Below, one piece after another: positions 23,720-45,353 of a stretch of 64,000 nt of DNA. Every line of letters starts with the position of its first letter. Positions within the stretch are counted from its first letter, which is position 1. The stretch is taken from positions 62,001 through 126,000 of IMG/VR virus record IMGVR_UViG_3300023174_000039. One strand, given 5' to 3'. Below the pieces are notes generated by a model that saw nothing but the letters and a program-made list of their open reading frames with translations, searched no databases and had not been told where the DNA came from. The translations under genes were made by a program, and so were the position numbers.

Positions 23720-23776
23720 TGTAGATGCCGATGGTCGGGTCTACATTTAACTAGTCATCTTGCTTAATAAAGGAGA
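23720..23776 (+). promoter_or_regulatory. ROSE-like RNA thermometer leader of hsp20
   Basis: 5' hairpin, then UCUUGCUU pairing with SD AAGGAGA with a bulged G. Confidence 0.65.
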
Positions 23777-23782
23777 AAACAA

Positions 23783-24241
23783 ATGACAAAAACTCTCACC
23801 CTTCGTTCTTTCGATATTCCCGCAATTCACAAATTTGGTATCGGGTTCGATAACATGTTTGATGAACTCATGCGTGTGAGTGCCCAACAAGGCAGCACCA
23901 ACTACCCACCTTATGATATTGTACAAGTCAACGATGACGAATACATGATCAGTGTGGCTGTGGCTGGATTTGGGTACGATGATCTCTCAGTGACCAAGGA
24001 TAAAAAGATTTTAGTTATCGAAGGCACACACAGTCGTGAAACTGTGGAAAATGAAGATTCAACTGCAAAATACCTGCACAAAGGAATCAGTGAGCGTAGT
24101 TTCCGTAGAGAATTTCAATTGGCGGATCATGTGGAAATTACCGGAGCACACCTTGAACTTGGTATCCTAAGTGTTCACTTAAAACGTGAAATACCTGAAG
24201 AAGCCAAGCCAAAGACCATTGCTATCACATACACTTCCTAA
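23783..24241 (+). CDS. small heat shock protein Hsp20 (IbpA-like)
   Basis: IGFD..FD, NYPPYDI, AVAGF, YLHKGISERSF.R.F.LAD. Confidence 0.96.
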   Translation: MTKTLTLRSFDIPAIHKFGIGFDNMFDELMRVSAQQGSTNYPPYDIVQVNDDEYMISVAVAGFGYDDLSVTKDKKILVIEGTHSRETVENEDSTAKYLHKGISERSFRREFQLADHVEITGAHLELGILSVHLKREIPEEAKPKTIAITYTS

Positions 24242-24296
24242 TATAATAGTGTAAATACAGTGACGGCACTGTGTCGTCACTGCAACAGGGAAAATC

Positions 24297-24605
24297 ATGT
24301 CACAATCAGAAACACGTACAAAAATTAAACCAAGTGAACAACTCAAAGAGCCACCAATGTACAAGGTCATCTATCTAAATGATAACCAAACCACAATGGA
24401 ATTTGTGATCGAAACCTTGATTGAATTTTTTAATTACAACACAGACACAGCGTTTACCATCACAGAAGACATTCACAATGCTGGATCAGCATGTGTTGCG
24501 GTGTTGCCATACGAGATTGCCGAACAAAAAGGTATTGAAGTAACCCTGGCAGCCAGAAATAATCAGTATCCTTTGCAGATCAAACTTGAGCCTGATCAGG
24601 CCTAA
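24297..24605 (+). CDS. clpS: ClpS N-degron adaptor
   Basis: PPMYKVIYLNDNQTTMEFV...IHNAG...YEIAEQK...YPL. Confidence 0.93.
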   Translation: MSQSETRTKIKPSEQLKEPPMYKVIYLNDNQTTMEFVIETLIEFFNYNTDTAFTITEDIHNAGSACVAVLPYEIAEQKGIEVTLAARNNQYPLQIKLEPDQA

Positions 24606-25393
24606 AACTCCACAGTGATTCGGCGAGGGTAGTACACATGCTGTCCGTACTCGGTATTGCCGCGGCCACGACAATGATTGAGATATCGGATGTTGTCGCG
24701 AATCTGATCAATAGGACTATGATAGTGCCCAAAACACCAGGTGTGTATTTTTCTTTCGGTATCTACCATGTGCGCCTGGCGCATGAGTTGGTTGCCCATG
24801 GTGTTGCATCTCCAGGTGCCTGCTAGATTGATGTCGTGACTGATCAGCACAGGATCAGGCACAGTGTGTGTTATCATTACAATTTTTTTAACATCCTGGT
24901 GTGTTTGTAATCGTTTCACAGAGTTGATCATGTACATGGCATCAGTTGTGGCCATCCTACCAATGGTTTTTACAGTGTCGCCGGTTAATTTGAATTTGTC
25001 TTGATACCACTGAGCACTTTGTGTGGGATCAATGGTTGGGTCAAAATCAAAACCAAACCAGCCATTGGTTCCCAGTATAGCAACACCGTCAATCACAACC
25101 ACATTGTCCTGTAGGTAAACCAAATTGGGGATCTTTTCAAGTCGTGTTACCAAATCAGCATAACTGTAGGTCAGGTTGTTGAGATAATTGGTATGTTCAT
25201 CATTGCCATCAATGTAGAAAACAGCCTGGTAATTTTTGCCCAGATGTGTAAGAACCTCCACTAGATCATTACGATCCATGGCTATGTCCCCTGCAACCAC
25301 AGCAACAGGGCTAGTGGCAATACCCGTCCAGTCAAATCGTGGCCAGGTATCAACGTGTAAATCAGAAATTAAATCAAAGCTAAATGTCATCAT
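24602..25393 (-). CDS. metallophosphoesterase
   Basis: SDLH, AGD, GNDEH, THTVP, FGHYH. Confidence 0.85.
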   Translation of the reverse strand: MMTFSFDLISDLHVDTWPRFDWTGIATSPVAVVAGDIAMDRNDLVEVLTHLGKNYQAVFYIDGNDEHTNYLNNLTYSYADLVTRLEKIPNLVYLQDNVVVIDGVAILGTNGWFGFDFDPTIDPTQSAQWYQDKFKLTGDTVKTIGRMATTDAMYMINSVKRLQTHQDVKKIVMITHTVPDPVLISHDINLAGTWRCNTMGNQLMRQAHMVDTERKIHTWCFGHYHSPIDQIRDNIRYLNHCRGRGNTEYGQHVYYPRRITVEF

Positions 25394-25414
25394 ACATATT
25401 TAAAAGGATTTAAC

Positions 25415-25765
25415 ATGCACATTATTTTTGGAGACGCTGTCAAAGAAATACCTGACAGCTATACTGTGTTAGAGCTCGACACAATAAACACCAACGGAAC
25501 TGTGGTCACAGCCTATTGTGTGGTAGAAAAAATACCATTGCAAGAGTTTCCCTTGATTGATGCTCATATCAAACTACATGAAGATGTGATCAAAAACTAC
25601 CGCCTGCAACACTGGGATTACTGTGAAAAAGCCATTGATGCGCTACAAGGCAAGTGGAACGGAGAAGTTGACAGCTTTTATCAAACGCTACTAGAGCGTA
25701 TAAAAACTCTTAAAGAATCTGTGTTGCCTGATAACTGGGATGGCGTTGTAATCAAAAACACCTAG
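25415..25765 (+). CDS. hypothetical protein
   Basis: YTVLELD...W.G; SD AGGA. Confidence 0.7.
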   Translation: MHIIFGDAVKEIPDSYTVLELDTINTNGTVVTAYCVVEKIPLQEFPLIDAHIKLHEDVIKNYRLQHWDYCEKAIDALQGKWNGEVDSFYQTLLERIKTLKESVLPDNWDGVVIKNT

Positions 25766-25810
25766 TAAATAAAACTTCCGGGCAAATGTAAATACCCAGG
25801 AGGAAAATAT

Positions 25811-25951
25811 ATGAGTTGGTTCAAAAGAAAACCGCATTTAAAAGCGCCGCCACAACAGCACCCGCATCACATCAGTCCAGCCACTGCAAAAGCACTGGAA
25901 AAAGCCAAAGAATCTGCGCCAAAAAAACAACCCGCCCCACCCGCTAAATAA
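25811..25951 (+). CDS. small basic Pro/Lys-rich protein (46 aa, not in ORF track)
   Basis: Strong SD GGAGG, TAAATA upstream; MSWFKRKPH... Confidence 0.55.
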   Translation: MSWFKRKPHLKAPPQQHPHHISPATAKALEKAKESAPKKQPAPPAK

Positions 25952-25971
25952 TTGATTAACAGGGGTCCAGA

Positions 25972-26832
25972 GTGAAAATAGCACGAGTTTTAATGGTCGG
26001 GGCACACCGCATTGGTGCCGCATGTTTGAGTCTGCAGTTTGATCATAATCTTAATAAATTTGACAAGACTTATGTGGTATGTCCACTTCCTGGCGATCGA
26101 CTACAAAAAGTATTTGAAAAATACAACATTGACACCCAAGGATTTGAATATATCAATGACTATGACCTAGTGAAAGAATTTCCTTTGATTTCCAATTGGT
26201 ATCTCACAGGAGAGTATCGTGGCACTTGGTTGATACAGCAGGCCATGAAGTTTTACATGCTTGATAAAATTGATGCAGATGTGGTATTCATCCACGATGC
26301 TGATAGTTTTTGTGTTGAGCCCTATGAGTGCGTGGTAGATGATAAATTAAATTTGTTTTATCTGCCAGAAACCACACATGCCTGGGAATACTACCGAGCA
26401 TTTGAGAATGTAACAGGATTGTCGAGACAGAGTACGGACTGTTATATTACAGAAATGATGCCAGTTTTTAAACATGACTGGAACAATTTAAAAACACTGA
26501 TTGCCAGCAAGTTTGACCAACCTTGGTCCAATGTGTTGATTGAGCAAACCCCTTGGGATCATGTGGGCAACATCAAATGGTTCAGCGAGTATGAATTCTT
26601 GGGCAACTGGACCACTAGTCAACACAGCGATTATATTCGAACTCAACAACACAGATACGATTATAAAAAGCTAGAAGATCTTACCTATCAAGATTTCCCT
26701 ACCGGCATCAACTGTGTGAGTGATAAAAACCCATTTGGTAATATATTACCTTTTGATTATGGCACCGATTCAGTGATGAACTTGGATACCGTGCTGGATC
26801 GTTTACAGCGCCTGGGCATATTACCTGATTAA
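25972..26832 (+). CDS. DUF6492-like (GT-A-like) protein
   Basis: WLIQQAMK, DAD, TEMMP, FSEYE.LG. Confidence 0.65.
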   Translation: MKIARVLMVGAHRIGAACLSLQFDHNLNKFDKTYVVCPLPGDRLQKVFEKYNIDTQGFEYINDYDLVKEFPLISNWYLTGEYRGTWLIQQAMKFYMLDKIDADVVFIHDADSFCVEPYECVVDDKLNLFYLPETTHAWEYYRAFENVTGLSRQSTDCYITEMMPVFKHDWNNLKTLIASKFDQPWSNVLIEQTPWDHVGNIKWFSEYEFLGNWTTSQHSDYIRTQQHRYDYKKLEDLTYQDFPTGINCVSDKNPFGNILPFDYGTDSVMNLDTVLDRLQRLGILPD

Positions 26833-28122
26833 CTGCTCAACCTCGTCCTGGTGTTGCATGCTTTCAAGTAATATTGCATCAGCCAATTTGAATTTTTCTG
26901 GACTATGAGTCCATGCCTGCCGAAACTCCAGCCAGTAACGCCCAGTTTTGTATTGTTCAATGATACTCAGTCCACGATTCAGGTTGTTGATAAATTCATC
27001 AAATATACTCTGTTGCCATCGATCACTGAAAAATAATTTTTTATTGTAATCAGCAATCTCATACAGGCGGTGCCACAGCTGATGTTTTTGCTCTAGCGGC
27101 AACTGACTAATTCTTTTCATTTCGGCACATATGCTGGCTAACCGTTTTGCAGGATCTTGAATGGCATCGTAGCTTTCGTCAATCATGCCAGCAAATGTTT
27201 TAAATCCATAGTTTCTAAGATATTGCAAACTACCTGCTGTGGCAGCCAATATAAATGGTCGTCCACATGCAATTGGCCGCAAGGACTTTTCGGTCAGGTG
27301 CCATCGTGCATCGTCAAACAATGTTTCTAGTACTACTTCTATAGCAGTAGTGCTATAGTCCAGAGTGGTGTAATCTGCGCTGGCAGTGGCGTCAACTTTG
27401 CATGGTTCAAAATAATTTTCCAAGTCTCTAGATTGTACAGTGAAGTCTGAGTTTTTGGGCTGAAAGGTAGTATAGTGCCCACTCTCACAATGTGAATTAA
27501 ATGTCATTTGACATTGATGTTGTAAATTGTGTTCTACCAACAGTTCGGTAAATTTCAGTCTATATTCCCGGGTACCGGACCAGGCACGATTGTACACTAA
27601 AAAATCTTTTTTGATTTGATTAAAGTTTGGCACCAGTCCGTAATCATTGGGTGCGTATCGATACCAGTCTGCGGCAATGGCAGCATGTGCCCACCAATAT
27701 ACTCCGACAAAATCTGCATTTTCGTACTGTGTTAGATTACTACTGTTCTGTTCACTGTGTACCAGCAACGTTTTATCATACACACTGTGTCTGGTGCCAA
27801 TGATTGAACGGAGATTTTGGTCAGTGACTAGTTTTTTTATTCTAGTCATGTTGTCCGGGTTATTGGCTATAGAGGGTGCATGCTTGACAAAATAATCCAT
27901 CATGATGTCATGTGTGTATTGATCAAAAAACAGCGGCTCTTGATCATGACACAATGCACCAGGCTTTTCAATCTGATGCCGCCATCCGTGCTGTTTAAAA
28001 TTGTACAAGGGCAACAGATCTACCAGATTTTTTGAGCCATGGGGATAGAAGCGATAAATTAATATGTCATGGTTGCATAAACCGTCTAAGTGATTGTATA
28101 ATCTATCTAAAGGAACACTCAT
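26821..28122 (-). CDS. phage glycosyltransferase-like hypothetical protein
   Basis: HDQEP, VVLET...LTEK..RPIA...PFI..A..GSL.YLR.YGF.TF...IDESYD; ATG at 28122. Confidence 0.6.
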   Translation of the reverse strand: MSVPLDRLYNHLDGLCNHDILIYRFYPHGSKNLVDLLPLYNFKQHGWRHQIEKPGALCHDQEPLFFDQYTHDIMMDYFVKHAPSIANNPDNMTRIKKLVTDQNLRSIIGTRHSVYDKTLLVHSEQNSSNLTQYENADFVGVYWWAHAAIAADWYRYAPNDYGLVPNFNQIKKDFLVYNRAWSGTREYRLKFTELLVEHNLQHQCQMTFNSHCESGHYTTFQPKNSDFTVQSRDLENYFEPCKVDATASADYTTLDYSTTAIEVVLETLFDDARWHLTEKSLRPIACGRPFILAATAGSLQYLRNYGFKTFAGMIDESYDAIQDPAKRLASICAEMKRISQLPLEQKHQLWHRLYEIADYNKKLFFSDRWQQSIFDEFINNLNRGLSIIEQYKTGRYWLEFRQAWTHSPEKFKLADAILLESMQHQDEVEQLIR

Positions 28123-28125
28123 AGT

Positions 28126-29364
28126 ATGAAAAAAATTGGATTTATTGGTATTGGTAAACTTGGCCTTGATTGCGCTGAAGTTATGGCAGAGAAGCACATG
28201 GTGCGGGGTTATGATATTTACCCACGTACCAGTGACACTGTAAAAGTTTGTGGCATTGACGAGCTGGTAAAAATGAGCGAATGGATCTTTATTGCTGTGC
28301 CAACCCCGCATGCAGAAGGATACGATGGATCCGTGCCATCAAGCCACATGACTCCCCGAGACTTTGGACATGATGCTGTGATTGATGCCATCAATAAAAT
28401 CAATCAACATGCTCAGACCAGCAAGAAGGTTGTGCTTATCTCTACTGTGCTACCAGGCACCACACGTGCCAAGTTTGTTACATTGCTGGACAAGAAACAT
28501 CAGTTCCTGTATAACCCTTATCTAATTGCCATGGGCAGTGTGAAGTGGGATATGGCCAATCCAGAGATGGTCATCATTGGCACCGAAGATGGTGAACTCA
28601 CAGGCATTGCTGGCGAACTGATTGAATTGTACAAGACCATCATGAACAACGATCCTCGTTATGAGATTGGCACATGGGACGAATGTGAAGCCATCAAGAT
28701 CTTCTATAACACATACATTTCTGCCAAGGTTGGCATTGTGAACATGATCCAGGACTTTGCCATGAAGATTGGCAACATCAATGTTGATGTTGTTACCAAT
28801 GCCCTGGCACGAAGCACCATGCGATTGCAAGGTCCCAAATACATGACAGCAGGCATGGGAGATGCAGGTGCATGCCATCCACGAGATAATATTGCCCTGC
28901 GTTGGTTGGCAGAACACTACGAAGTGGGCTATGACCTGTTTGACACAATCATGCATGCTCGTGAAATACAGGCCAAGAATCTGGGCTTGTTCTTGGTTGA
29001 ACAAGCCCGAGCCACAGGATTACCAATTGTGATTCATGGCAAAGCCTACAAGCCCGACGTTGAATACTGTATTGGTTCATACTCTACCTTGGTTGGACAC
29101 TATGTAAAAGAAGCAGGCATGCCTGTGGTATATGTTGATCCGCTGGCAGACAACCAGGATGAAGTGGTTGCGGAAGTCACAGGACCTGCTGTGTTTTTAT
29201 GGGCACACAACCGCAAGATCACCTACGAGTACACAGGCGAACAACAAGACACACAGGCCTATTGTGATATCAAACCAGGTTCGGTTATTGTTGATCCTTG
29301 GCGTAAACTGGCATCTACCGCAGATTACCGAGTAGTACACTATGGCAACACACGTGGTCAGTAA
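28126..29364 (+). CDS. UDP-glucose/GDP-mannose dehydrogenase family protein
   Basis: GIGKLG, AVPTP, STVLPG, IKIFYN, GACHPRD, AYKP, DP. Confidence 0.92.
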   Translation: MKKIGFIGIGKLGLDCAEVMAEKHMVRGYDIYPRTSDTVKVCGIDELVKMSEWIFIAVPTPHAEGYDGSVPSSHMTPRDFGHDAVIDAINKINQHAQTSKKVVLISTVLPGTTRAKFVTLLDKKHQFLYNPYLIAMGSVKWDMANPEMVIIGTEDGELTGIAGELIELYKTIMNNDPRYEIGTWDECEAIKIFYNTYISAKVGIVNMIQDFAMKIGNINVDVVTNALARSTMRLQGPKYMTAGMGDAGACHPRDNIALRWLAEHYEVGYDLFDTIMHAREIQAKNLGLFLVEQARATGLPIVIHGKAYKPDVEYCIGSYSTLVGHYVKEAGMPVVYVDPLADNQDEVVAEVTGPAVFLWAHNRKITYEYTGEQQDTQAYCDIKPGSVIVDPWRKLASTADYRVVHYGNTRGQ

Positions 29365-29860
29365 ATACAATCTTCCAGTATTCTGGAACGATGAGTACAA
29401 GACTCTTGACTATGTTCAAGAGCCTTTTAATGACCCTGTTAGTGTAGAACGTTGGCTTGAACAGGGCTACACCAACAAAATCACAGGCGATCTGTGCGAC
29501 ATGCGTCACCGTTTGCCCGTATGGACAGAAAGATTTATCAAAATTTATACTGAACTGGGATGGAAGGACATTGGACTTGCATTCTATCGCATGCCCACAG
29601 GAACAGTGATGCCGGTTCACAGTGACTTGTACAAACGCTATGTTGAACTGTTTGACTTGAAAGGCAAGGAACAGTCAATTCGCCGTGCGTTGGTTCTGAT
29701 GGAAGACTGGAAGTCGGGGCACTATCTTGAAGTCAATGGGCATCCTTATGTGAATTGGCAAGCAGGAACCACAGTGGAGTGGCAATATGATACTCCGCAC
29801 TCTGCAGCCAATATTGGTCTAGAAGATCGTTATACATTGCAAATTACTGGACACATATGA
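29342..29860 (+). CDS. 2OG-Fe(II) oxygenase-like protein
   Basis: PVHSD...PHSAANIG..DR..LQITG. Confidence 0.75.
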   Translation: MATHVVSKYNLPVFWNDEYKTLDYVQEPFNDPVSVERWLEQGYTNKITGDLCDMRHRLPVWTERFIKIYTELGWKDIGLAFYRMPTGTVMPVHSDLYKRYVELFDLKGKEQSIRRALVLMEDWKSGHYLEVNGHPYVNWQAGTTVEWQYDTPHSAANIGLEDRYTLQITGHI

Positions 29861-30780
29861 TAAGTTCACACAATGAATGGGACCCATTAAAAAAGATTGT
29901 GGTAGGCACAGCTGATTATGCCAACTGGCCATTACACGATCCTGTTTTTTCAAAGGAAAGTGAAAAGACCAGCTGGAAAGAAACTCCAGTACCCAGTGGC
30001 CCTGTGCCACAATGGATCATTGATGAAGCCAACGAAGACCTTGACGGCCTGGCCAAGATTTTAACAGATCAGGGTGTGGAAGTTGTGCGCCCAGAACCCT
30101 TGAACTTTCAAACACACGATGGCATGTACAATTACTGTCCCAGAGATAGATTGTTGATTGTTGGGGACAAGGTCATTGATACTGCCATGATGTATCCCTG
30201 CAGAGACATGGAACTACAATGCTATCACGAAATACTTGGAGATGCAGAAGTAATCACCATGCCTAGAGATCAAGGTCTTGTGCTAGATGCAGCCAACATA
30301 CTACGTCTTGGACCCAATAAGATGTTGTACTTGGAAAGCGCAAGCGGCAACAAAGCTGCCTACTATTGGTTGTTGGCCAACTTACCTCCCACCACCAGCA
30401 TTGAGCTGTGTAATTTTTACGCTGGAGTACACATTGATTCGACCATTGTGCCCTTGCGTGAAGGTGTTGTCATGTTGAATGCCAGCCGTGTGAGTTTTGA
30501 CAACGTTCCTCGAGCATTTGACGGCTGGCAAAAGATCTGGGTTCGTGACGTGGTAGCACAAGGATTTCATGAATACCCTTATGCATCAAAATGGATTGCA
30601 ATGAACCTGTTGGTAGTGGACCCAGAAACTGTTATAGTGGACCGGCACCAAACCGAATTGATCAAAACCTTGGAAAGTTACCGATTCCGAGTAATTCCGC
30701 ACGAATTACGTCATAGTAGGACCTTGGGCGGTGGATTTCATTGTGTTACATTAGACCTAATTCGGCAAGCAAGAAGTTGA
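29857..30780 (+). CDS. amidinotransferase (glycine/inosamine-phosphate amidinotransferase family)
   Basis: HNEWDPL, CPRD, DAAN, HIDST, GGGFHCVT. Confidence 0.92.
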   Translation: MISSHNEWDPLKKIVVGTADYANWPLHDPVFSKESEKTSWKETPVPSGPVPQWIIDEANEDLDGLAKILTDQGVEVVRPEPLNFQTHDGMYNYCPRDRLLIVGDKVIDTAMMYPCRDMELQCYHEILGDAEVITMPRDQGLVLDAANILRLGPNKMLYLESASGNKAAYYWLLANLPPTTSIELCNFYAGVHIDSTIVPLREGVVMLNASRVSFDNVPRAFDGWQKIWVRDVVAQGFHEYPYASKWIAMNLLVVDPETVIVDRHQTELIKTLESYRFRVIPHELRHSRTLGGGFHCVTLDLIRQARS

Positions 30781-30805
30781 CTTTTTGCACAATTGAGTAT
30801 ATAAT
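30777..30805 (+). promoter_or_regulatory. sigma70 promoter for uvsE (probably leaderless mRNA)
   Basis: TTGACT-17-TATAAT with ATG 6 nt later; -35 contains the upstream TGA. Confidence 0.8.
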
Positions 30806-30811
30806 ACTCAT

Positions 30812-31840: not shown

Positions 31841-32099
31841 ATGGATACGTGATGATTTTAAGTCTCACCCAGTTCGCTTTGTTGTTGAGCTTGTTGCTTG
31901 GGCTACTAGTGTTGGTTGCAGTATTACTATGGCACTCACAGTCCCCAATCCACCGCTTCTTGCTATGTATCCTGTTTGGATCTCTGGCTGTGCCATGTAT
32001 GCTTGGGCTAGTTGGTCTAGGAAATCTTTTGGCATGCTGGCTAACTATCTACTGTTGACCACCATTGACAGTGTGGGCTTGGCACGAATGTTAACCTAG
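31812..32099 (+). CDS. small membrane protein
   Basis: Three TM-like segments; ATG at 31812. Confidence 0.7.
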   Translation: MNNIFLSTLEWIRDDFKSHPVRFVVELVAWATSVGCSITMALTVPNPPLLAMYPVWISGCAMYAWASWSRKSFGMLANYLLLTTIDSVGLARMLT

Positions 32100-38694: not shown

Positions 38695-38695
38695 T

Positions 38696-38788
38696 ATGAA
38701 CGGCGAACGCATCTACAATTTAGTGTGTGAAGCGATAATAGTCGTGGGATTTGCTGTAGTAGGGTGGTATCTAATTTTAGGAGAATGA
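38696..38788 (+). CDS. 30-aa single-TM peptide
   Basis: SD GGAG; MNGERIYNLVCEAIIVVGFAVVGWYLILGE. Confidence 0.5.
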   Translation: MNGERIYNLVCEAIIVVGFAVVGWYLILGE

Positions 38789-38789
38789 A

Positions 38790-39377
38790 ATGACGGAAGA
38801 AATAAAAGACGTAAATGCCAAGGTTGATGAACTAGAAGCAGCCGCAAAGAAGTATGCCAGCAAAGACACAGTGATCTCAATTGGCGGGTACGAGTTTACA
38901 CCAGCCAAGCTGATGGTGGCATTTACCATTGTGAGCTCCACACTGGGCGGGCTGTATGGCACATTTGAAGTGTACAAAGATTACATGGGTATGAAGAAAA
39001 AGATTGCCGAATACACTGCTCCGGACTTGAGTGGTTTTGACAAGCGACTGGCAGTGATTGAAGAAAACAGCCAAAAGACCAGCGACTATACTCGTGACAT
39101 CAAGACGGATTTGAAGAACGATTTGCGTCGTAATGAATCAGTAACTGAGCAAGTAGAACGCAGTGTCAAGACAGCACAACGTGAAACTGAAAGTGAAATG
39201 CGTGACATGCGTCGAGCTGTGCGTGAAGATCTAGAAAAAGCTCGTAACGAAGCCAGTGTTATCCGCAAGGAAATGGCTGATGCTCGCAGAGAAATTGAGC
39301 GTGAAGTTGTTCAGCTAAAGAAAGAAGTTGATGGCAAGATACAACGAGCCATCGATAATCCATTGGCCAACAAGTGA
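38790..39377 (+). CDS. membrane-anchored coiled-coil protein
   Basis: TM segment, then heptads; ends DNPLAN. Confidence 0.75.
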   Translation: MTEEIKDVNAKVDELEAAAKKYASKDTVISIGGYEFTPAKLMVAFTIVSSTLGGLYGTFEVYKDYMGMKKKIAEYTAPDLSGFDKRLAVIEENSQKTSDYTRDIKTDLKNDLRRNESVTEQVERSVKTAQRETESEMRDMRRAVREDLEKARNEASVIRKEMADARREIEREVVQLKKEVDGKIQRAIDNPLANK

Positions 39378-39686
39378 TCACACGCCTGTAAATGAATACG
39401 CAGAGCCACTGACAAACACGCCGCCTGTGATAGTGACTGTTTGACTTGGTGCATTTGTGCTGACCACTGTGGCACCTGGCAACCCAACCACAGTCCACCC
39501 GGCCTGGATATCATAATAACTTGGTGATGGAGTAGTTGCCCAACTGCCACCTTGAAAGAAGAATCCAACAGTGCCGTTGCTGCCTGCCACGTTCTGAAAA
39601 CTTTGTGTTGTTTGTCCGGCATAGTTGCCTGGACCGATAGTCCATCCGCCTTGAATTGACCATCCGGGTCCAATTGATACTGGCAT
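39378..39686 (-). CDS. small putative virion decoration protein
   Basis: N-terminal IGPGW.I.GGW.IG motif. Confidence 0.6.
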   Translation of the reverse strand: MPVSIGPGWSIQGGWTIGPGNYAGQTTQSFQNVAGSNGTVGFFFQGGSWATTPSPSYYDIQAGWTVVGLPGATVVSTNAPSQTVTITGGVFVSGSAYSFTGV

Positions 39687-39756
39687 AATTTTTCCTTTGT
39701 GTAAAAGACTTACAGGGGAAAAATGCTACCACTTCCAGTGTTAATGTTTGTTTTAT

Positions 39757-40443
39757 TTATGCTGATTTTTTAATTACCGCTTGAACAAGGCTGTCTATGC
39801 TGTTCACAATGGGCACACCTTGTTCACTAGCAATACCGATGCTTAGGGGCAATTCAGTACAGCCCAGCACAATAGCTTGAGCTCCATGTGTGATCAGGCT
39901 GTGAATCACCTGCATCAGCAATACCTGAGATTCCCCAATCTTGCCAGCCTTGATAAAGTCAATTGCAGGTTGTACAAAAAAGTCCATTTCAGCACGGTCA
40001 GGAACAATACATTTCCATCCCTGTTGCTCTAGTTTGTGTTGATAGATACCGTTGTCTATTGTGCCTTGTGTGCCCATGATGCCAATGGTGGTGTTGGCAA
40101 GTCCTAGTTCACGCAGTTGATCTGCTATGCTGTCCACTATGTGAGTGATGGGCACACCCATTTTTGCCATGTCATCATACCAATAGTGTGCAGAGTTGCA
40201 AGGGATCACAACATGATCACAGCCCACAGTTTTCAGTGCCTGTATGCCCTGCAACAACCACAGCATGGGTTGATTGTCACCGGCTTGCATGGCTCGGCTA
40301 CGGTCAGGTATTCTTGGCTCGTTCCACAACACAAAAGGTATGTGTTCTTGATCGGTTGTGGCAGGCGTTTGTTTTATGAGTCTAGTCACAAACTCTGCTG
40401 ATGCCGCAGGACCCATGCCACCTAGTATGCCCAATCGTTTCAT
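39757..40443 (-). CDS. aspartate/glutamate racemase
   Basis: MKRLGILGGMGP, PDR, IPCNSAH, LGCTELP (two catalytic Cys). Confidence 0.93.
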   Translation of the reverse strand: MKRLGILGGMGPAASAEFVTRLIKQTPATTDQEHIPFVLWNEPRIPDRSRAMQAGDNQPMLWLLQGIQALKTVGCDHVVIPCNSAHYWYDDMAKMGVPITHIVDSIADQLRELGLANTTIGIMGTQGTIDNGIYQHKLEQQGWKCIVPDRAEMDFFVQPAIDFIKAGKIGESQVLLMQVIHSLITHGAQAIVLGCTELPLSIGIASEQGVPIVNSIDSLVQAVIKKSA

Positions 40444-41219
40444 ACTTTGCTGTGTTGCAACAACAACACAGTGTTGTTGTGTTGATTGGGATGAAAATCT
40501 CTGCGCATGAAGCTCAACCAAGGTCCGACCAACCCAGTCACAAATCCATTTTTCCAGTTGAACAACACAATCACAGCATCTTTTGCTGTGCGCCATTTCC
40601 ACAGTTGACGATCTGCACGTAGCAACACCAGGGTATTTCTGGCAATATCCCACACAAAGTTTGCAGTGGTCAACAGCATGCTGAGTCGCAGTTTACCGCC
40701 GCCAATGGCGTTGATAGTGTCCATGGCAACTGCTTTGTGTTCTATTTCTTCCACAGCATGCCAAGTCCACAACTGACGAAAGTGAGGATGCATGCTGTCC
40801 AACAGTTCAGGATGTGTCAACAAGTGTTCGGCAAAGATGGCAGTGATGTGCTCTAGACTCACTGTGCTGGCCAGTTGACCTTTTTTGCTGATTTTGGTTT
40901 TGATGTATTCTAGTTTGGCCAGTGCCAGTGCTTCCAAACGTTCAGCAGGCAAGCCTTGCTTGGTCAGCCAAAGATTGTATTGTTGGTGAGCATAACGATG
41001 CCAGTTTTCTTGTTTGACAAATGTGGCAATTGCTTGTTGTTGGTCAGCATCGGTGATTCTGTGTTGATAGTTTTTCACGCTGTCAATAAAGAAACGTTCA
41101 CCATGTGGGAATGTGATGCTCAAGGCATTTAAAAAATGTGTTTTGAACGCACTGTTATCAAAATAGTATTTTGGTAATTCCTGTGTCCAGTCTTGCTTTA
41201 GTGGTTGTTCTTTGAACAT
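40440..41219 (-). CDS. predicted metal-dependent hydrolase (PF10118-like, di-metal)
   Basis: NALS.TFP.GE.FFI, QE..H...H, LEH.TA, WHA.EE.EHK.VA, FHP. Confidence 0.85.
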   Translation of the reverse strand: MFKEQPLKQDWTQELPKYYFDNSAFKTHFLNALSITFPHGERFFIDSVKNYQHRITDADQQQAIATFVKQENWHRYAHQQYNLWLTKQGLPAERLEALALAKLEYIKTKISKKGQLASTVSLEHITAIFAEHLLTHPELLDSMHPHFRQLWTWHAVEEIEHKAVAMDTINAIGGGKLRLSMLLTTANFVWDIARNTLVLLRADRQLWKWRTAKDAVIVLFNWKNGFVTGLVGPWLSFMRRDFHPNQHNNTVLLLQHSKV

Positions 41220-41224
41220 ATTAG

Positions 41225-42133
41225 TTAGAAGGTAATTGATCCTGACCCCACAGTGGTCCACTTGTACACTCTATAGCCACCGGCAACTGTGACAGTTGGG
41301 CTACCAGTAGTGGCAGTTGCGGCTGCATATGAGTCTGGGTAACGAATGATCACGATACCTGATCCGCCACCTGCGCCAGACCCGTCGTTTCCCGGAGTCC
41401 CGCCGCCTGAGCCACCGCCGCCTCCACCAGTGTTTGGAGTTCCGGCAGTTGCAGTGGTTGCTCCTGTTGCTCCTGCACCACCGCCACCTGCACCACCAGA
41501 TCCAGCTGTACCACTGCCACCGCCACCAGCGTATCCACCGCCACCACCGCCACCTGCATAGGTTACAGATGTTCCAGATATTGAACTTGCTGTGCCTCCT
41601 CCACCATTTCCACCATTAGCTCCAGCATTGCCACCAACCGCACTGGCGCCGCCACCGCCACCAGCATGATAAGGAGGAGAAGTTGAACCTGATCCCCCGG
41701 AATTTCCTTGGCTTCCTGTCCCAGAACCACCCGATCCCGGCGCCGACACGCCGTACCCACCACCGCCACCAGATCCACCTGTTCCGCCGCCACTGGTACT
41801 ACTGGTATATGAATACGCACCGGCGCCACCACCAATAGATGTTATAGTGCTAAAAATAGAATCACCACCAGATGCACCTGCTTGTGTGCTTGAGTTTGGT
41901 GCGCCACCTGCGCCAACAGTGACCGTGATGGGTGTACCACTGGCTACTGCAAATCCTGTTGCGGTTCTAAATCCACCTGCACCCCCGCCCCCGCCATGTC
42001 GTGTACCACCTGCCCCGCCACCGCCAACCACAAGATATTCAACTGTGGGCGTAACTGACGGGCCACCACCTGTGGTATCGCCAATGGCCCATGCACCTGT
42101 AATTGCCCATCCGGGCCCGATTGTGAATCCCAT
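41225..42133 (-). CDS. glycine-rich domain virion/fibre protein
   Basis: VEYLVVGGGG, NTGGGGGG, GGSGIVIIRY; shares the N-terminal IGPGW motif. Confidence 0.75.
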   Translation of the reverse strand: MGFTIGPGWAITGAWAIGDTTGGGPSVTPTVEYLVVGGGGAGGTRHGGGGGAGGFRTATGFAVASGTPITVTVGAGGAPNSSTQAGASGGDSIFSTITSIGGGAGAYSYTSSTSGGGTGGSGGGGGYGVSAPGSGGSGTGSQGNSGGSGSTSPPYHAGGGGGASAVGGNAGANGGNGGGGTASSISGTSVTYAGGGGGGGYAGGGGSGTAGSGGAGGGGAGATGATTATAGTPNTGGGGGGSGGGTPGNDGSGAGGGSGIVIIRYPDSYAAATATTGSPTVTVAGGYRVYKWTTVGSGSITF

Positions 42134-42158
42134 GCTTGTGTCCTTATTAGACTCTTAT

Positions 42159-42761
42159 TTATTTTTTAAACAACAATGATGAAGCGATGACCAAGGCAGT
42201 CTGTGCAGCCTCTACGTCATCAGGCTGTTGTTTCCAACCCACGCTGATTTGTCCTATAAACACCCCGGGCTCGGCAGGCACACTGATACGGCACATGTAA
42301 TTCACACCGTTTTCTCTGTAGGCAAATCCAATTAGACTTTGTGGTTTGAGATAGGGACTGCACGGTATTTTACCAGACATGAGTCCAATCACATCATTGT
42401 TGTTGTCGTAGTTTTTGCTGAACAAGCCCACATCCAGGCCGTCGTACTGCTTGATTCTGCCACCATTGCGTGTGGACACAAACACAATTTTTCTTGTGTT
42501 TACCAGGGTATTGACCTCCATGATAGACACCAGTTCTACATCGGTGTTTTTCAACAAGAAATTGTAGGCTTCTTCATATCGGCCATTCATCTTGGGCAGG
42601 GCCTGTTGGGCACGATATGTGGCCATCATGGCATCTTTTTCGCTGTAAACAAACCAGCCCACAAAGCCCAGCACACACAGTAATATTACTGTGAATAATC
42701 TAAAAGGACTTTGCCCGATCCAGTTTAGTATTTCAAGCAGGGCTTCTTTGATCTTGTCCAT
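42159..42761 (-). CDS. single-TM protein with GAF-like periplasmic domain (T4 holin T-like?)
   Basis: N-terminal TM; C-terminal YMCRISVP....FIGQISVGW. Confidence 0.45.
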   Translation of the reverse strand: MDKIKEALLEILNWIGQSPFRLFTVILLCVLGFVGWFVYSEKDAMMATYRAQQALPKMNGRYEEAYNFLLKNTDVELVSIMEVNTLVNTRKIVFVSTRNGGRIKQYDGLDVGLFSKNYDNNNDVIGLMSGKIPCSPYLKPQSLIGFAYRENGVNYMCRISVPAEPGVFIGQISVGWKQQPDDVEAAQTALVIASSLLFKK

Positions 42762-44022
42762 GTGCCTGTTCTTTGTCACAAACAAATGCTGTCACTGCTA
42801 CGTTACCATGCACATGACTTGCTGTGCGAATCATGTCCATCAGAGGATCAACTGCAATCAACAGTACCAACACAGCTTCGCTGGGCAGTTTCAACAAGTC
42901 ACAAACAACTGCTACAGTGGCCACTGTGAGAATACCTGTTGTACCTGCTGATGCAAGCCCTGCCAAGATACTACCAAATAGCACAACTAGTAATCCTGTT
43001 AAGCCTAGTGGTGCATCATAAATGTTGGCAATGAATACTGTGGCAATGGCATAGTAAACGATACTACCAATGCGATTAACAGTGAAGCTGAGTGGCACAG
43101 TTAGTTCAACGCCGCCCTTGTCAAAGTGTAGTTTGTGCAGGGCTTCTTGTGCGTATGGGATACAGGCCAAACTTGAGCGTGAACTCACAGCAACAATCAG
43201 TGTTTCTTTGGTTTCTCGGATCACGGTAGCAAGGCTTAGACCTGAACGTGCCCAGATCACAGCAGTACCTGCCGCAACAACCAACACCCCCCCAACAAAC
43301 TGCTGGAACACAAAGTCAAACATGGTCATGAAGATGCCCACACCAACCTTGCCAACCTGCGATGAAATCATGGCCAACAGCGCAATTGGCAAGAAATAGT
43401 TTAGGAACTTGAAGATGCTGATACTGGCCTGTTGAATACTCTTTAGCACTTCCACCAACATCTTTTGACCTTCTGTTTTCAGGTGCCCCAGTGCCACACC
43501 AAAGATCAAACAAAAGATCACAATCTTTAAGCTCTCACCATTGTTTAGTGTGTTGAAGATGTTTTCAGGAATGAACTTTTCTGCCATCTTGCCTGCATTG
43601 ACAGGTGGTGCAACAGGCATGGGCTCGTGTAAAGTGATATTCAAATCAGTACCACTGTCTTTGTTGTTGACCAGCACACCCAGTTGTGTTTTCTTCTCTG
43701 GTGTCATTTCTGTACCTGTGACCAGCACAGTGCCCACACCAATCACAGCGGCCAGGAACATACTGCCCACAAAGCCAATGATGATTTTGCGTATCAATTC
43801 TTGACTGCCTTCTTTCTGCAGTAGGCCAATGATACCCACCAGGATAGTGGCCAACAAGAATGGTAACACAACAACTTTGAGCAGGCTGATGTAGATGCTG
43901 CCAATGCTGTCAAGACCTGTGCTGAACTCTGGAGCATACACACCAGCTAGAATGCCCACAATGATTGAACCAAGTATGGTCCAGGGGCTGATCAAAAATG
44001 TTTTTAAATGTGCAGTTGTCAT
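42733..44022 (-). CDS. dicarboxylate/amino acid:cation symporter (DAACS, GltP family)
   Basis: Multi-TM; IPENIF, SSRSS hairpin, D...DM.RT in TM8. Confidence 0.92.
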   Translation of the reverse strand: MTTAHLKTFLISPWTILGSIIVGILAGVYAPEFSTGLDSIGSIYISLLKVVVLPFLLATILVGIIGLLQKEGSQELIRKIIIGFVGSMFLAAVIGVGTVLVTGTEMTPEKKTQLGVLVNNKDSGTDLNITLHEPMPVAPPVNAGKMAEKFIPENIFNTLNNGESLKIVIFCLIFGVALGHLKTEGQKMLVEVLKSIQQASISIFKFLNYFLPIALLAMISSQVGKVGVGIFMTMFDFVFQQFVGGVLVVAAGTAVIWARSGLSLATVIRETKETLIVAVSSRSSLACIPYAQEALHKLHFDKGGVELTVPLSFTVNRIGSIVYYAIATVFIANIYDAPLGLTGLLVVLFGSILAGLASAGTTGILTVATVAVVCDLLKLPSEAVLVLLIAVDPLMDMIRTASHVHGNVAVTAFVCDKEQAHGQDQRSPA

Positions 44023-44031
44023 GGGGTGTCC

Positions 44032-44850
44032 TTATTTCTTTTCAGCTTTGTAGCGATCCATCAACTTCTTGGTGTCGATGTTGTTGTATTCATTTTTAAT
44101 CACGTAGTTGACCACGCTCAACAGTTGAATAGCCCGGGGATTCACTGCCACAGCAATGTTGTCTACACTGTCAGAGATGGTGATTGACTTGGTAGTAATT
44201 GCCGCATCTGGCTTTTCAAATGCAATTTTCTTGATTTCAAATTCATCACGGTAAGCGGCAGCGATGTCGCCACGTGTGACTTTGTCAATGATCACATCCC
44301 ACTTGTCTTCAGGCAGGAATTGTGCATTGGGAAAGTTAATTCTAGCAAATGTGTCATAACTGGAGTTGCGGATAAAACTTATCTTGCCGTTGAATTCTCT
44401 AATCACTTGATACACTTCTCTGCCCTGAGTATTCTGGCTCAACCATAGTCGATTCACAACTAAACTTTGGCGCAGTTTGATATAGGGATCACTGAATCTA
44501 ACTACTTGTAACCGTGGACCAGTTACGGATAGTTTACTAACAGCAATATCTGCTCTGCCATCTCTGACCTGTTCTACAACTTCTGCGAAGCTTTCTGCGT
44601 CTCGTCTAAACTGTACAGGAACTCCAAGTAACACCCCAATGCGTCGAGCGATCTCAACGTCAAGGCCGTGTATGGTATCCTCGTCTCCGGAAAAGAATGG
44701 AGGATTGTCTTTTTTGGTCATTGCCACCACAAGCACATTGGCTTTTTTGATTGCGGCAATATCTGCGGGTAGTGGTACAGTTGATGTTGGTAACTGTGCA
44801 GAAGCAACAGTGGCCAACACAAGTAATACGGTGGCGAATAGTTTTTTCAT
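44032..44850 (-). CDS. periplasmic amino-acid substrate-binding protein (SBP family 3)
   Basis: Signal peptide; NPPF, GLDVEIA, ADIAVS.LS.T..R...V.FSDPY. Confidence 0.92.
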   Translation of the reverse strand: MKKLFATVLLVLATVASAQLPTSTVPLPADIAAIKKANVLVVAMTKKDNPPFFSGDEDTIHGLDVEIARRIGVLLGVPVQFRRDAESFAEVVEQVRDGRADIAVSKLSVTGPRLQVVRFSDPYIKLRQSLVVNRLWLSQNTQGREVYQVIREFNGKISFIRNSSYDTFARINFPNAQFLPEDKWDVIIDKVTRGDIAAAYRDEFEIKKIAFEKPDAAITTKSITISDSVDNIAVAVNPRAIQLLSVVNYVIKNEYNNIDTKKLMDRYKAEKK

Positions 44851-44911
44851 TTGTATGTGTCCATAATGTAGGTATTTAATACCCAACGTTATTTATGTTT
44901 TTAGATGTTAC

Positions 44912-44940
44912 AAAAAAAAGTCCCTTGCGGGACTCTTTTT
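44912..44940. terminator. bidirectional-type terminator hairpin
   Basis: A-tract, AGTCCC-TTGC-GGGACT, T-tract. Confidence 0.8.
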
Positions 44941-45208
44941 ATTTTGCCGCTGGCTTGGGTGCTTTTGGCTTGGGTTCTGCTTTGGGTTTTGCAGGTGCCC
45001 GGGGTTTTGGTGTTGCCTTGGGTTTTGCAGGTGCTTTGGGGACAGGAGCGGCAATTGTTGCCTCAGTCCCTGCTGGCACAACTTCAACCTTGGTTTCAAC
45101 CACGGGTGCTGATTCAACCTTGGTTTCAGGTGCTGGTGCTTCGACTTTGTATGGTGCTTCGGGAATTGAAGGCTTGCCAAACAAGAATTCTTTGATTTTT
45201 GCTAACAT
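44939..45208 (-). CDS. Pro/Ala/Lys-rich small protein
   Basis: SD AGGAG and TAAATA upstream; KAPAKPK repeats. Confidence 0.7.
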   Translation of the reverse strand: MLAKIKEFLFGKPSIPEAPYKVEAPAPETKVESAPVVETKVEVVPAGTEATIAAPVPKAPAKPKATPKPRAPAKPKAEPKPKAPKPAAK

Positions 45209-45266
45209 AATGTTCTCCTATACAATTATTTATTAGTGATTGTTCACTAGAAAAAATTAAGATAAT

Positions 45267-45297
45267 TGTTGCAGTGCAAGGTAAATAATGTTACAAT
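45267..45297 (+). promoter_or_regulatory. PhaR-like box overlapping sigma70 and late promoters
   Basis: TGTTGCAGTGCAA; TTGCAG-17-TACAAT; TAAATA at 45282. Confidence 0.6.
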
Positions 45298-45302
45298 AGA
45301 AC

Positions 45303-45353
45303 ATAGGGTGCTGAATAGGTCGGGCCTTATAGTAAACTCGCTTAAATTAGGAG
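45303..45353 (+). promoter_or_regulatory. ROSE-like leader similar to the hsp20 leader
   Basis: Hairpin with TGC.GA...GGTCGGG; CTCGCTT opposite AGGAG. Confidence 0.55.

What the first reader, a model, noticed from the sequence alone, without database searches (positions are those of the whole stretch)
23720..45353. Shared structured RNA leader (ROSE-like thermometer) on hsp20 and on the phasin-like gene
Seen: hsp20 leader GTAGATGCCGATGGTCGGGTCTAC...TCTTGCTTAATAAAGGAGA and phasin leader ATAGGGTGCTGAATAGGTCGGGCCTTAT...CTCGCTTAAATTAGGAGA share a hairpin core (TGCYGA...GGTCGGG) with altered but still pairing outer stems. Both have UYGCU opposite the SD. Known: UYGCU/SD pairing defines ROSE thermometers of small heat shock genes. 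Inference: two genes 21 kb apart share one temperature- or protein-controlled RNA switch, which suggests a stress/chaperone role for the phasin-like protein.
Basis: partly seen in the sequence, partly recalled or inferred. Interest (0 to 1): 0.62.

Follow-up and report, generated by a model that had tools for sequence, protein, structure and literature searches.

The report
Shared ROSE-type leader in a jumbo phage
A 332-kb freshwater phage puts its small heat-shock gene and an unrelated 91-residue gene behind the same two-hairpin "ROSE" RNA leader that bacteria use as a thermometer on ibpA; relatives also use it on groES-groEL, which points to a phage-encoded, translationally controlled chaperone regulon.

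Summary
Both quoted leaders are at the stated places. They are homologous. A covariance model built only from leaders of the 91-aa gene in 50 related phage contigs finds the window's hsp20 leader as the second-best hit in the 331,654-bp genome (47 bits, E 2.7e-9). It also finds all 43 distinct hsp20 leaders of relatives.

Both window leaders align end to end with Rfam ROSE_3, the Pseudomonas ibpA thermometer. They score 23.0 and 25.7 bits, below the curated 43. The same model hits a bacterial ibpA leader that scores 59 bits on ROSE_3.

Hairpin I has strong covariation. The SD hairpin keeps the U(U/C)GCU motif with a bulged G and shows modest covariation. In relatives the same leader also precedes groES-groEL.

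Temperature sensing is untested, and folding energies do not single out the SD helices. Repression by the phage IbpA is a live alternative or addition, because the protein keeps the RNA-binding Arg93 and Tyr34.

Homology of the 91-aa protein to phasins is not supported by profile tests. However, its promoter carries a conserved PhaR-type operator (TGTTGC-N3-GCAA), the same one found upstream of true phasin genes.

Verdict: a new member of a known kind, the first ROSE-type leader family seen in phages.

The parts
23685..23713 (+). Inferred sigma-70-type promoter of hsp20: TTGACA (23685-23690), 17-nt spacer, TATAAA (23708-23713). The predicted start is about 23720, at the foot of hairpin I.
   Evidence: Read from the sequence. 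Relatives keep a -10 box (TATAAATA or TATAATAAATA) at the same distance. The tool's scan does not list it, because the hexamer ends in A. No PhaR-type motif is present here.
23721..23744 (+). hsp20 leader hairpin I: GUAGAU[G]CCGA-UGG-UCGGGUCUAC. The core is a U.G pair, a bulged G and a C-G pair.
   Evidence: Predicted fold. 17 of 18 core bases equal the ROSE_3 consensus GAUGCCGAAgUCGGGUC. Four pairs show compensatory changes among 44 hsp20 leaders, including a C-G/G-C swap.
23754..23787 (+). hsp20 leader hairpin II. Anti-SD CUUGCU (23759-23764, bulged G at 23762) lies opposite SD AGGAG (23771-23775). A possible GUCA/UGAC clamp (23754-23757 with 23784-23787) covers the start codon.
   Evidence: Folds (-4.0 kcal/mol at 37 C). 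These pairs are nearly invariant in relatives, so they give no covariation evidence.
23783..24241 (+). hsp20 gene, IbpA-type, 152 aa.
   Evidence: Pfam HSP20 E 6e-17. PHROG Hsp20 E 1e-38. NCBIfam IbpA 123.7 bits, below the equivalog cut-off of 212. It keeps the residues equivalent to E. coli IbpA Tyr34, Arg93 and Arg97, here Y41, R105 and R109.
45267..45297 (+). Promoter of the 91-aa gene with a PhaR-type operator. TGTTGCAGTGCAA (45267-45279) overlaps the -35 box TTGCAG (45269-45274). The -10 box TACAAT lies at 45292-45297.
   Evidence: Sequence. TGC-N3-GCA lies at this position in 43 of 62 distinct relatives and in 0 of 55 hsp20 upstream regions. It matches the published motifs TG-N-TGC-N3-GCAA (PMC3206438) and TGCRNYGCASMA (PMC6201568). 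The same 15-mer lies upstream of 6 of 9 true Phasin_2 genes.
45303..45330 (+). 91-aa gene leader hairpin I: AUAGGGU[G]CUGA-AUAGG-UCGGGCCUUAU. The core is the same U.G pair, bulged G and C-G pair.
   Evidence: Fold. 8 of 11 pairs show compensatory changes among 50 leaders, with 97% of cells paired.
45337..45353 (+). 91-aa gene leader hairpin II: anti-SD CUCGCU (bulged G at 45340) paired with SD AGGAG (45349-45353).
   Evidence: Fold of -2.7 kcal/mol at 37 C and -5.0 at 20 C. One pair switches C-G to U-A in 7 sequences, and three pairs vary on one side only, C-G to U.G.
45360..45635 (+). 91-aa gene of unknown function. It encodes three helices and an invariant C-terminal motif KFDYxKFGEG.
   Evidence: AlphaFold2 pLDDT 88.5. 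More than 2000 relatives, mostly viral. 375 clusters at 50% identity. No Pfam family over its cut-off. A metatranscriptome contig covers 45348-45671.
45669..45712 (+). Intrinsic terminator of the 91-aa gene: a hairpin followed by a run of U.
   Evidence: Fold of -22.2 kcal/mol, z -3.2. The RNA-derived contig ends at 45671.

Best explanation
Both leaders are copies of one two-hairpin ROSE-type 5' untranslated region, of the kind described for Pseudomonas ibpA (Rfam ROSE_3).

How it is built:
- Transcription by the host RNA polymerase starts at the foot of a stable hairpin I.
- After a short spacer, a weak hairpin II pairs U(U/C)GCU, with a bulged G, to the Shine-Dalgarno AGGAG.

How it most likely works (inferred from the studied bacterial homologues): at low temperature the ribosome-binding site is masked. 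Warming melts hairpin II and translation rises. Hairpin I stays folded and stabilises the transcript or helps hairpin II fold.

The phage most likely took ibpA with its leader from a proteobacterium and then copied the leader onto other genes. These are the 91-aa gene in this genome and groES-groEL in relatives. A set of proteostasis genes therefore answers to one translational signal while being transcribed from different promoters. The phage IbpA may add a second layer by binding these leaders.

Shown here: homology, conservation, covariation and gene context. Inferred: SD masking in vivo, the temperature response and IbpA binding.
For: Homology between the two leaders:
- Model R1, built from 91-aa-gene leaders only, finds the hsp20 leader at 47 bits, E 2.7e-9.
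- It also finds all 43 distinct hsp20 leaders of relatives, each match ending at the ATG.

Link to ROSE_3:
- Both window leaders align over positions 1-69 of 69 of ROSE_3, with E 0.006 and 0.001 in 201-nt searches.
- R1 hits the leaders of bacterial ibpA homologues. One of them, from Pigmentiphaga, scores 59 bits on ROSE_3 against a cut-off of 43.

Structure:
- 97 leaders give 96.9% paired cells, against 43-57% with slid partners. 10 of 16 pairs show changes on both sides. Searches agree.
- The Y.G pair, bulged G and C-G pair are invariant in both hairpins.

Context:
- Five near-complete relatives have two such leaders each. One has a third, on groES-groEL.
- At least 17 phage groES loci carry the leader.

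Anatomy and RNA evidence:
- The UTR of about 60 nt, the two hairpins and the G-C/C-G swap in hairpin I match Krajewski et al. 2013 (PMC3669281).
- An RNA-library contig covers the 91-aa gene.
Against: - Both leaders score below the Rfam gathering score, 23.0 and 25.7 bits against 43. Nothing passed that threshold in the window-wide scan.
- Nearest-neighbour energies do not single out the SD helices: z is -1.1 and -0.6.
- SD accessibility ranks at 0.21-0.45 among 53 AGGAG-bearing genes of this genome.
- Local shuffles pair the SD almost as often, 0.63 against 0.76.
- The predicted melting is gradual and lies above lake temperatures.
- Hairpin II has only one pair with changes on both sides.
- Two relatives (L054, L066) have no leader on the 91-aa gene, and nine have a simpler hairpin I.
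- The hsp20 promoter does not look like a sigma-32 promoter, unlike bacterial ibpA.
Confidence: 0.65

Rival explanations
1. The main signal is protein, not temperature. The phage IbpA binds the ROSE-type leaders of hsp20, the 91-aa gene and, in relatives, groES, and represses their translation. When IbpA is drawn onto aggregating proteins during infection, repression is lifted. This is an aggregation sensor of the E. coli IbpA type. It can coexist with thermosensing.
For: - E. coli, Cedecea and Vibrio IbpA repress their own translation by binding the ibpA 5' UTR. Arg93 is irreplaceable, positions 97 and 98 need a positive charge, and an aromatic residue is needed at position 34 (PMC10474464).
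- The phage protein keeps Tyr34, Arg93 and Arg97, whereas E. coli IbpB has Gln at position 93.
- The same Y.G, bulged G, C-G core is invariant in both hairpins across 95 sequences. That pattern fits recognition by a trans-acting factor better than mere stability.
- All five near-complete genomes examined carry both the hsp20 leader and the 91-aa-gene leader.
Against:
- The Lys98 equivalent is Glu in the phage proteins.
- Which RNA features IbpA recognises is not known.
- Hairpin I sequences of the two genes do not change together within a genome: compare L004 with L084, and the two window leaders.
Confidence: 0.3
2. The leader is only an expression cassette. A 5'-terminal hairpin protects the mRNA from decay, and a strong AGGAG site drives translation. 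There is no switch, and the U(U/C)GCU motif is inherited baggage.
For: - Hairpin I sits at the predicted 5' end.
- Krajewski et al. suggest that hairpin I stabilises the transcript.
- Energy tests for SD masking are inconclusive.
- clpS also has a 5' hairpin after its own promoter.
Against: - The anti-SD motif and its bulged G are kept at a fixed distance from the SD in more than 100 diverged leaders of three gene families.
- The motif changes together with the SD: CUC/GAG becomes UUC/GAA in 7 sequences, and some lineages use a shifted register that still leaves a bulged G.
- The hairpin I core is conserved in sequence, which stability alone does not require.
Confidence: 0.12
3. The likeness is chance, or a very recent local duplication without function.
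For: With only two copies in one genome, this could not be excluded from the window alone.
Against: - E 2.7e-9 for the cross-hit.
- Both gene families carry the leader in dozens of diverged contigs. The proteins are down to 56% and 76% identical.
- Compensatory changes are present.
Confidence: 0.01

Closest known systems
Short ROSE-like RNA thermometer of Pseudomonas ibpA (Rfam RF02523 ROSE_3; Krajewski et al. 2013, PMC3669281)
   Same: - A UTR of about 60 nt with two hairpins.
- Hairpin I core GAUGCC..GGGUC, including the same G-C/C-G swap.
- Hairpin II with U(U/C)GCU and a bulged G opposite AGGAG.
- The downstream gene is an IbpA-type sHsp.
   Different: - The phage leaders are AU-rich and score 23-26 bits against the cut-off of 43.
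- There are no G-C clamps around the SD core.
- The promoter is sigma-70-like rather than sigma-32-like.
- The element lies in a virus and also sits on a non-sHsp gene and, in relatives, on groES-groEL.
IbpA self-repression through the ibpA 5' UTR (Miwa, Cheng and Taguchi; PMC10474464, bioRxiv 10.1101/2020.04.20.050740)
   Same: An IbpA-type protein with Arg93 and Tyr34, together with thermometer-type leaders.
   Different: It has been shown only for gamma-proteobacterial proteins. Here several genes would be targets, which would make a regulon. Nothing has been tested.
ROSE-like elements on non-heat-shock genes (ABC transporters, PMC11342760 and PMC12857270)
   Same: A ROSE motif recruited to genes other than sHsp genes.
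   Different: Those elements are bacterial, and I did not compare them in sequence. Here the recruited genes sit beside chaperone genes in a phage.
Known phage RNA thermometers: lambda cIII, SPbeta blyA and a gut-phage sigma-70 gene (listed in PMC11182007)
   Same: Temperature-responsive 5' UTRs encoded by phages.
   Different: As described in the paper, lambda cIII works through alternative mRNA structures and the gut-phage sigma-70 element is fourU. None of the three is described there as ROSE-type, and none is reported on more than one gene of a phage.
PhaR/PhbF repression of phasin (phaP) promoters (PMC3206438, PMC6201568)
   Same: The promoter of the 91-aa gene has TG-N-TGC-N3-GCAA over its -35 box, as phaP promoters do. 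The same 15-mers lie upstream of true phasin genes.
   Different: The gene product is not demonstrably a phasin. No phaR was found in the phage. Binding is untested.

Membership tests
ROSE-like RNA thermometer (ROSE_3 type) | Lies in the 5' UTR of a small heat-shock gene | tested here: met
   Met for hsp20 (Pfam HSP20 E 6e-17). Not met for the 91-aa gene, whose function is unknown.
ROSE-like RNA thermometer (ROSE_3 type) | [quoted passage not shown] | tested here: met
   Predicted folds. 96.9% of cells are paired in 97 leaders, and hairpin I has 9 of 11 pairs with changes on both sides.
ROSE-like RNA thermometer (ROSE_3 type) | U(U/C)GCU opposite the SD, with a bulged G | tested here: met
   CUUGCU at 23759-23764 and CUCGCU at 45337-45342. 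In the 97-leader alignment, the pair before the bulged G is U.G in 65 and C-G in 29 of 95 sequences. The pair after it is C-G in 89 of 95.
ROSE-like RNA thermometer (ROSE_3 type) | Reaches the Rfam gathering score (43 bits) | tested here: not met
   23.0 and 25.7 bits over the full model length. No hit in the window-wide gathering scan. A bacterial leader that R1 also hits scores 59 bits.
ROSE-like RNA thermometer (ROSE_3 type) | The SD helix is more stable or more occluding than chance | tested here: inconclusive
   z -1.1 and -0.6. Accessibility rank 0.21-0.45 among 53 AGGAG-bearing genes. Shuffles pair the SD at 0.63 against an observed 0.76.
ROSE-like RNA thermometer (ROSE_3 type) | Temperature-dependent melting and translation | not testable with these tools
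   Only a nearest-neighbour melting curve could be computed: -7.0 kcal/mol at 5 C, falling to -0.9 at 50 C.
IbpA with mRNA-binding self-repression | Arg93, an aromatic residue at position 34, and basic residues at positions 97 and 98 (E. coli numbering) | tested here: met
   R105, Y41 and R109 are present. The residue at position 98 is Glu, and an extra Arg sits at position 96. RNA binding itself was not tested.
Phasin (Pfam Phasin_2) | Sequence or profile homology to the phasin domain | tested here: not met
   16.1 bits against a cut-off of 24.9. 15 of 61 and 4 of 68 family members give sub-threshold hits. hhalign against 8 true Phasin_2 domains gives a probability of 2.9%. The atlas rows for Phasin_2, PHB_acc and PHA_synth_III_E score 0.84-0.88, which makes them leads only.
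PhaR-controlled promoter | TGC-N3-GCA palindrome over or beside the -35 box | tested here: met
   45267-45279. Conserved in 43 of 62 relatives and absent from 0 of 55 controls. The same 15-mer lies upstream of 6 of 9 true phasin genes. Binding by PhaR was not tested.

The most novel reading that the evidence does not exclude
A clade of freshwater jumbo phages runs its own post-transcriptional proteostasis regulon. Phage IbpA, acting as an RNA-binding sensor of aggregation or temperature, controls translation of ibpA, groES-groEL and a conserved 91-aa protein through a shared ROSE-type leader. The leader's bulged-G core is presented twice, once in each hairpin. The 91-aa gene is also gated by the host PhaR repressor, so its output would combine the host's PHB storage state with stress. 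This fits a granule- or inclusion-coating protein that works alongside IbpA. IbpA's involvement in PHA production is the subject of PMC10646324, of which I saw only the title and the start of the abstract. That IbpA coats PHA granules is my own recollection, not a tool result.
Probability: 0.15. Interest if true: 0.85.

Novelty: new member of a known kind. Interest (0 to 1): 0.64.

Why it matters
- By the count in PMC11182007, only three RNA thermometers are described in phages. None of them is described there as ROSE-type.
- Here one leader family occurs in more than 100 phage contigs and on three gene families.
- That gives a natural test of two open questions: what the conserved hairpin I of short ROSE elements is for, and whether IbpA-type proteins regulate genes other than their own.
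- It attaches a testable regulatory context to an abundant viral protein family of unknown function, which has more than 2000 members.
- It suggests that these uncultured jumbo phages infect PHB-storing proteobacteria that use Shine-Dalgarno sites.

Tried and rejected
- **ROSE_3 scan of the whole genome**: it missed both leaders because its first-look filter did not pass them. I scanned the genome with my own model instead.
- **Megablast of the hsp20 region against known phages**: no match.
- **tRNA scan and Rfam gathering scan of the window**: nothing.
- **Fold searches for the 91-aa protein** and **PDB sequence searches**: only generic helical matches.
- **PHROGs and NCBIfam for the 91-aa protein**: weak, unrelated hits. 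JGI's name for the family, 'ATP phosphoribosyltransferase', looks like an artefact of a weak HisG hit.
- **Phasin homology**: rejected at the profile level.
- **PhaR domains and Cpn10 in the phage genome**: none found. The tool's first look can miss matches.
- **Energy-based tests of SD masking**: inconclusive.
- **A clamp helix over the start codon** (GUCA/UGAC in hsp20, GUAAAC/GUUUAC in the 91-aa leader): appears in the MFE folds. It never varies in hsp20, and by eye the spacer variants of the 91-aa gene do not keep it. I do not claim it.
- **Co-variation of hairpin I between the two genes within one genome**: none seen by eye.
- **Complex prediction**: not used, because the partner in question is RNA.


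Full report
**Setting.** The window is bases 62001-126000 of a 331,654-bp IMG/VR virus record. CheckV estimates it 95% complete, and its G+C content is 44%. It belongs to a large clade of uncultured phages of about 300-360 kb that is common in freshwater metagenomes.

**The observation.** Both quoted strings are present once each, at 23721-23744 and 45303-45330.
- The first lies 62 nt before the ATG of an IbpA-type hsp20 gene at 23783-24241 (Pfam HSP20 E 6e-17; PHROG Hsp20). A clpS gene follows directly at 24297-24605.
- The second lies 57 nt before the ATG of a 91-codon ORF at 45360-45635.
- The shared core TGCYGA..GGTCGGG occurs nowhere else in the genome.

**Anatomy.** Each unit has the same order of parts.
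- First comes a sigma-70-like promoter, which is my reading of the sequence: TTGACA-17-TATAAA at 23685-23713, and TTGCAG-17-TACAAT at 45269-45297.
- Hairpin I starts about where transcription should start.
- A spacer follows, and then a weak hairpin II in which C-U-Y-[G]-C-U pairs with AGGAG, leaving the G bulged.
- The 91-aa gene ends in a strong intrinsic terminator at 45669-45712 (-22.2 kcal/mol, z -3.2), so it is a one-gene unit.

**Relatedness of the two leaders.**
- I collected 80 loci each for the 91-aa protein and for Hsp20 from viral contigs and read their upstream regions.
- A covariance model (R1) built from 50 distinct leaders of the 91-aa gene only was run over the whole genome.
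- After its own leader (81 bits), the best hit is the hsp20 leader, at 47 bits and E 2.7e-9. The next hit has 22 bits.
- The same model finds all 43 distinct hsp20 leaders of relatives at 28-51 bits, each match ending at the ATG.

**Relation to ROSE.**
- In targeted Rfam searches both leaders align over the full ROSE_3 model, positions 1-69 of 69. They score 23.0 and 25.7 bits, with E 0.006 and 0.001 for 201-nt searches.
- This is below the curated 43 bits, and nothing passed in the window-wide scan.
- The ROSE_3 consensus for hairpin I, GAUGCCGAAgUCGGGUC, is almost letter for letter the window's GAUGCCGAUGGUCGGGUC.
- R1 also hits the leaders of bacterial ibpA homologues found with the phage protein: a Rickettsiales MAG at 32.9 bits, Rhodospirillaceae at 21-27 bits, and Pigmentiphaga at 22 bits.
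- The Pigmentiphaga leader scores 59 bits on ROSE_3. This links the phage leaders to the curated family.
- The anatomy fits Krajewski et al. 2013 (PMC3669281). They describe a 61-62-nt UTR with two hairpins. Hairpin I is conserved, heat-stable and carries a G-C/C-G swap. Hairpin II is sufficient for thermoregulation.

**Covariation.**
- 91-aa gene leaders (50 sequences, MAFFT alignment, my structure): 96.8% of cells are paired, against 31-58% with slid partners. In hairpin I, 8 of 11 pairs change on both sides. In hairpin II, one pair switches C-G to U-A in 7 sequences and three pairs vary on one side only, C-G to U.G.
- hsp20 leaders (44 sequences): 98.5% are paired, and four hairpin I pairs show changes on both sides. 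Hairpin II hardly varies, so it gives no evidence either way.
- All 97 leaders aligned to R1: 96.9% are paired and 10 of 16 pairs show changes on both sides. This alignment leans towards the model's structure.
- In both hairpins the same core is fixed: a Y.G or Y-G pair, a bulged G, and a C-G pair.

**A third gene family.**
- In five near-complete relatives of 343-353 kb, R1 finds two leaders per genome.
- One genome has a third leader. It precedes groES-groEL (Cpn10 E 1e-32, Cpn60 E 2e-53).
- Of 23 phage groES loci, at least 17 carry the leader.
- No Cpn10 was found in the window's genome.
- The leader is therefore a movable cassette, used mainly on chaperone genes. This is the best argument that the 91-aa protein belongs to a stress or proteostasis module.

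**Mechanism.**
- By homology, the most likely mechanism is SD masking that heat relieves.
- I could not support this from energies. The hairpin II segments are no more stable than shuffles (z -1.1 and -0.6).
- SD accessibility is ordinary among 53 AGGAG-bearing genes of the genome.
- Shuffled spacers pair the SD almost as often as the real ones.
- The computed free energy of the 91-aa gene's SD helix falls smoothly from -7.0 kcal/mol at 5 C to -0.9 at 50 C.
- Nearest-neighbour models do not describe the non-canonical ROSE core, so I treat these results as inconclusive.

**A second possible layer.**
- E. coli-type IbpA represses its own translation by binding its thermometer-type UTR. Arg93 is irreplaceable (PMC10474464).
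- The phage protein keeps Tyr34, Arg93 and Arg97, here Y41, R105 and R109. Lys98 is Glu in the phage protein. E. coli IbpB has Gln at position 93.
- The core conserved twice per leader would suit recognition by a protein. This is inference.

**The 91-aa protein.**
- It is predicted to form three helices (pLDDT 88.5).
- It has an invariant C-terminal KFDYxKFGEG motif and a very large, mostly viral family.
- Phasin_2 is the only Pfam family that recurs, but always below its cut-off.
- A profile-profile comparison with eight true Phasin_2 domains gives a probability of 2.9%.
- Structure searches give nothing specific. Homology to phasins is not supported.

**An unexpected promoter signal.**
- The -35 region of the 91-aa gene carries TGTTGCAGTGCAA at 45267-45279.
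- This is an exact match to the Herbaspirillum PhbF/PhaR motif TG-N-TGC-N3-GCAA (PMC3206438).
- It is close to the Bradyrhizobium PhaR consensus TGCRNYGCASMA (PMC6201568). The published sites TGCATTGCAACA and TGCGCCGCAGCA occur letter for letter in relatives' promoters.
- TGC-N3-GCA sits at this position in 43 of 62 distinct relatives. Most of the rest differ by one letter or one spacer base. It occurs in 0 of 55 hsp20 upstream regions.
- The 15-mer TGTTGC-N3-GCARCA also lies upstream of 6 of 9 true phasin genes in Caenispirillum, Nisaea and Pigmentiphaga.
- The two relatives that lack the ROSE leader (L054, L066) keep this operator.
- No phaR was found in the phage, so a host PhaR would have to act.
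- The gene is thus regulated like a phasin gene even though its product is not recognisably a phasin.

**RNA evidence.** One freshwater metatranscriptome run holds part of the stretch. Laid on 42700-48600, a 324-nt contig covers 45348-45671, which is the gene up to its terminator. The other 5 kb are almost bare. Contigs cannot show transcript ends, strand or level, and DNA can be present in RNA libraries.

**Host.** The sigma-70-like promoters, the strong SD sites, the ROSE_3-type leader and the PhaR operator together suggest a PHB-storing proteobacterium. This is inference with low confidence. The two closest 'bacterial' Hsp20 hits, in Sediminibacterium and Haliscomenobacter MAGs at 76-82% identity, lie on short contigs or at contig ends. 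They are probably phage DNA binned into those MAGs.

**Novelty.** PMC11182007 lists three phage RNA thermometers, and none of them is described there as ROSE-type. My literature searches found no phage ROSE element. ROSE-like elements on non-heat-shock genes are known in bacteria (PMC11342760). The element itself is a known kind. Its presence in phages, its spread to groES-groEL and to an unknown gene, and its pairing with a PhaR-type promoter are new.

Noticed in passing
window 45267-45297: The promoter of the 91-aa gene carries a conserved PhaR/PhbF-type operator, TGTTGC-N3-GCAA, over its -35 box. The same 15-mer lies upstream of true phasin genes in alpha- and beta-proteobacteria. The motif is absent from hsp20 promoters.
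   Followed up: partly
window 53703-53715: A second intergenic copy of the PhaR-type motif (TGTTGCACTGCAA). It lies about 45 nt upstream of a TTGACC-17-TATAAT promoter of ORF 53782-54192, an AIG2/GGACT-like gamma-glutamyl cyclotransferase. The other five full-motif hits in the genome lie inside open reading frames.
   Followed up: partly
L245:1219-1565 (relative G003) and L255-L274: Related phages carry groES-groEL behind the same two-hairpin ROSE-type leader. No Cpn10 was found in the window's own genome.
   Followed up: yes
window 56785-56843 (-): An element resembling hairpin I only (GUCCUGCAUAGGGCGGGAC), with no anti-SD motif, lies just before ORF 56560-56787. It is the third-best R1 hit, at 22 bits.
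   Followed up: no
window 45660-45688: A perfect sigma-70 consensus promoter (TTGACA-17-TATAAT, with TG) is embedded in the terminator hairpin of the 91-aa gene. The same bases would end one transcript and start the next.
   Followed up: no
window 24219-24605: clpS (Pfam ClpS E 6e-25) follows hsp20 directly. It has its own promoter-like site (TTGCTA-17-TATAAT) and a different 5' hairpin (GTGACGGCACTGTGTCGTCAC). A phage that pairs an sHsp with a Clp adaptor is unusual.
   Followed up: no
window 42733-44886 (-): Two transport genes are transcribed divergently from the 91-aa gene. They are a sodium:dicarboxylate symporter (E 2e-65) and a family-3 solute-binding protein (E 2e-17). Small RNA-library contigs touch them.
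   Followed up: no
L181, L182 (MAG contigs): Contigs assigned to Sediminibacterium and Haliscomenobacter MAGs encode Hsp20 proteins 76-82% identical to the phage protein, and L182 shows the 3' end of the leader. They are probably phage DNA binned into MAGs and are not evidence for the host.
   Followed up: no
protein family of window 45360-45635: JGI names many members 'ATP phosphoribosyltransferase'. This seems to rest on a weak, sub-threshold HisG hit and is probably a mis-annotation.
   Followed up: partly
L054, L066; L013, L023, L025, L035, L042, L053, L064, L065, L081: Two relatives have no leader hairpins on the 91-aa gene: the promoter runs straight into the SD. Nine have a simpler hairpin I without the bulged-G core. 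All keep the U(U/C)GCU..AGGAG part or the PhaR-type operator.
   Followed up: partly
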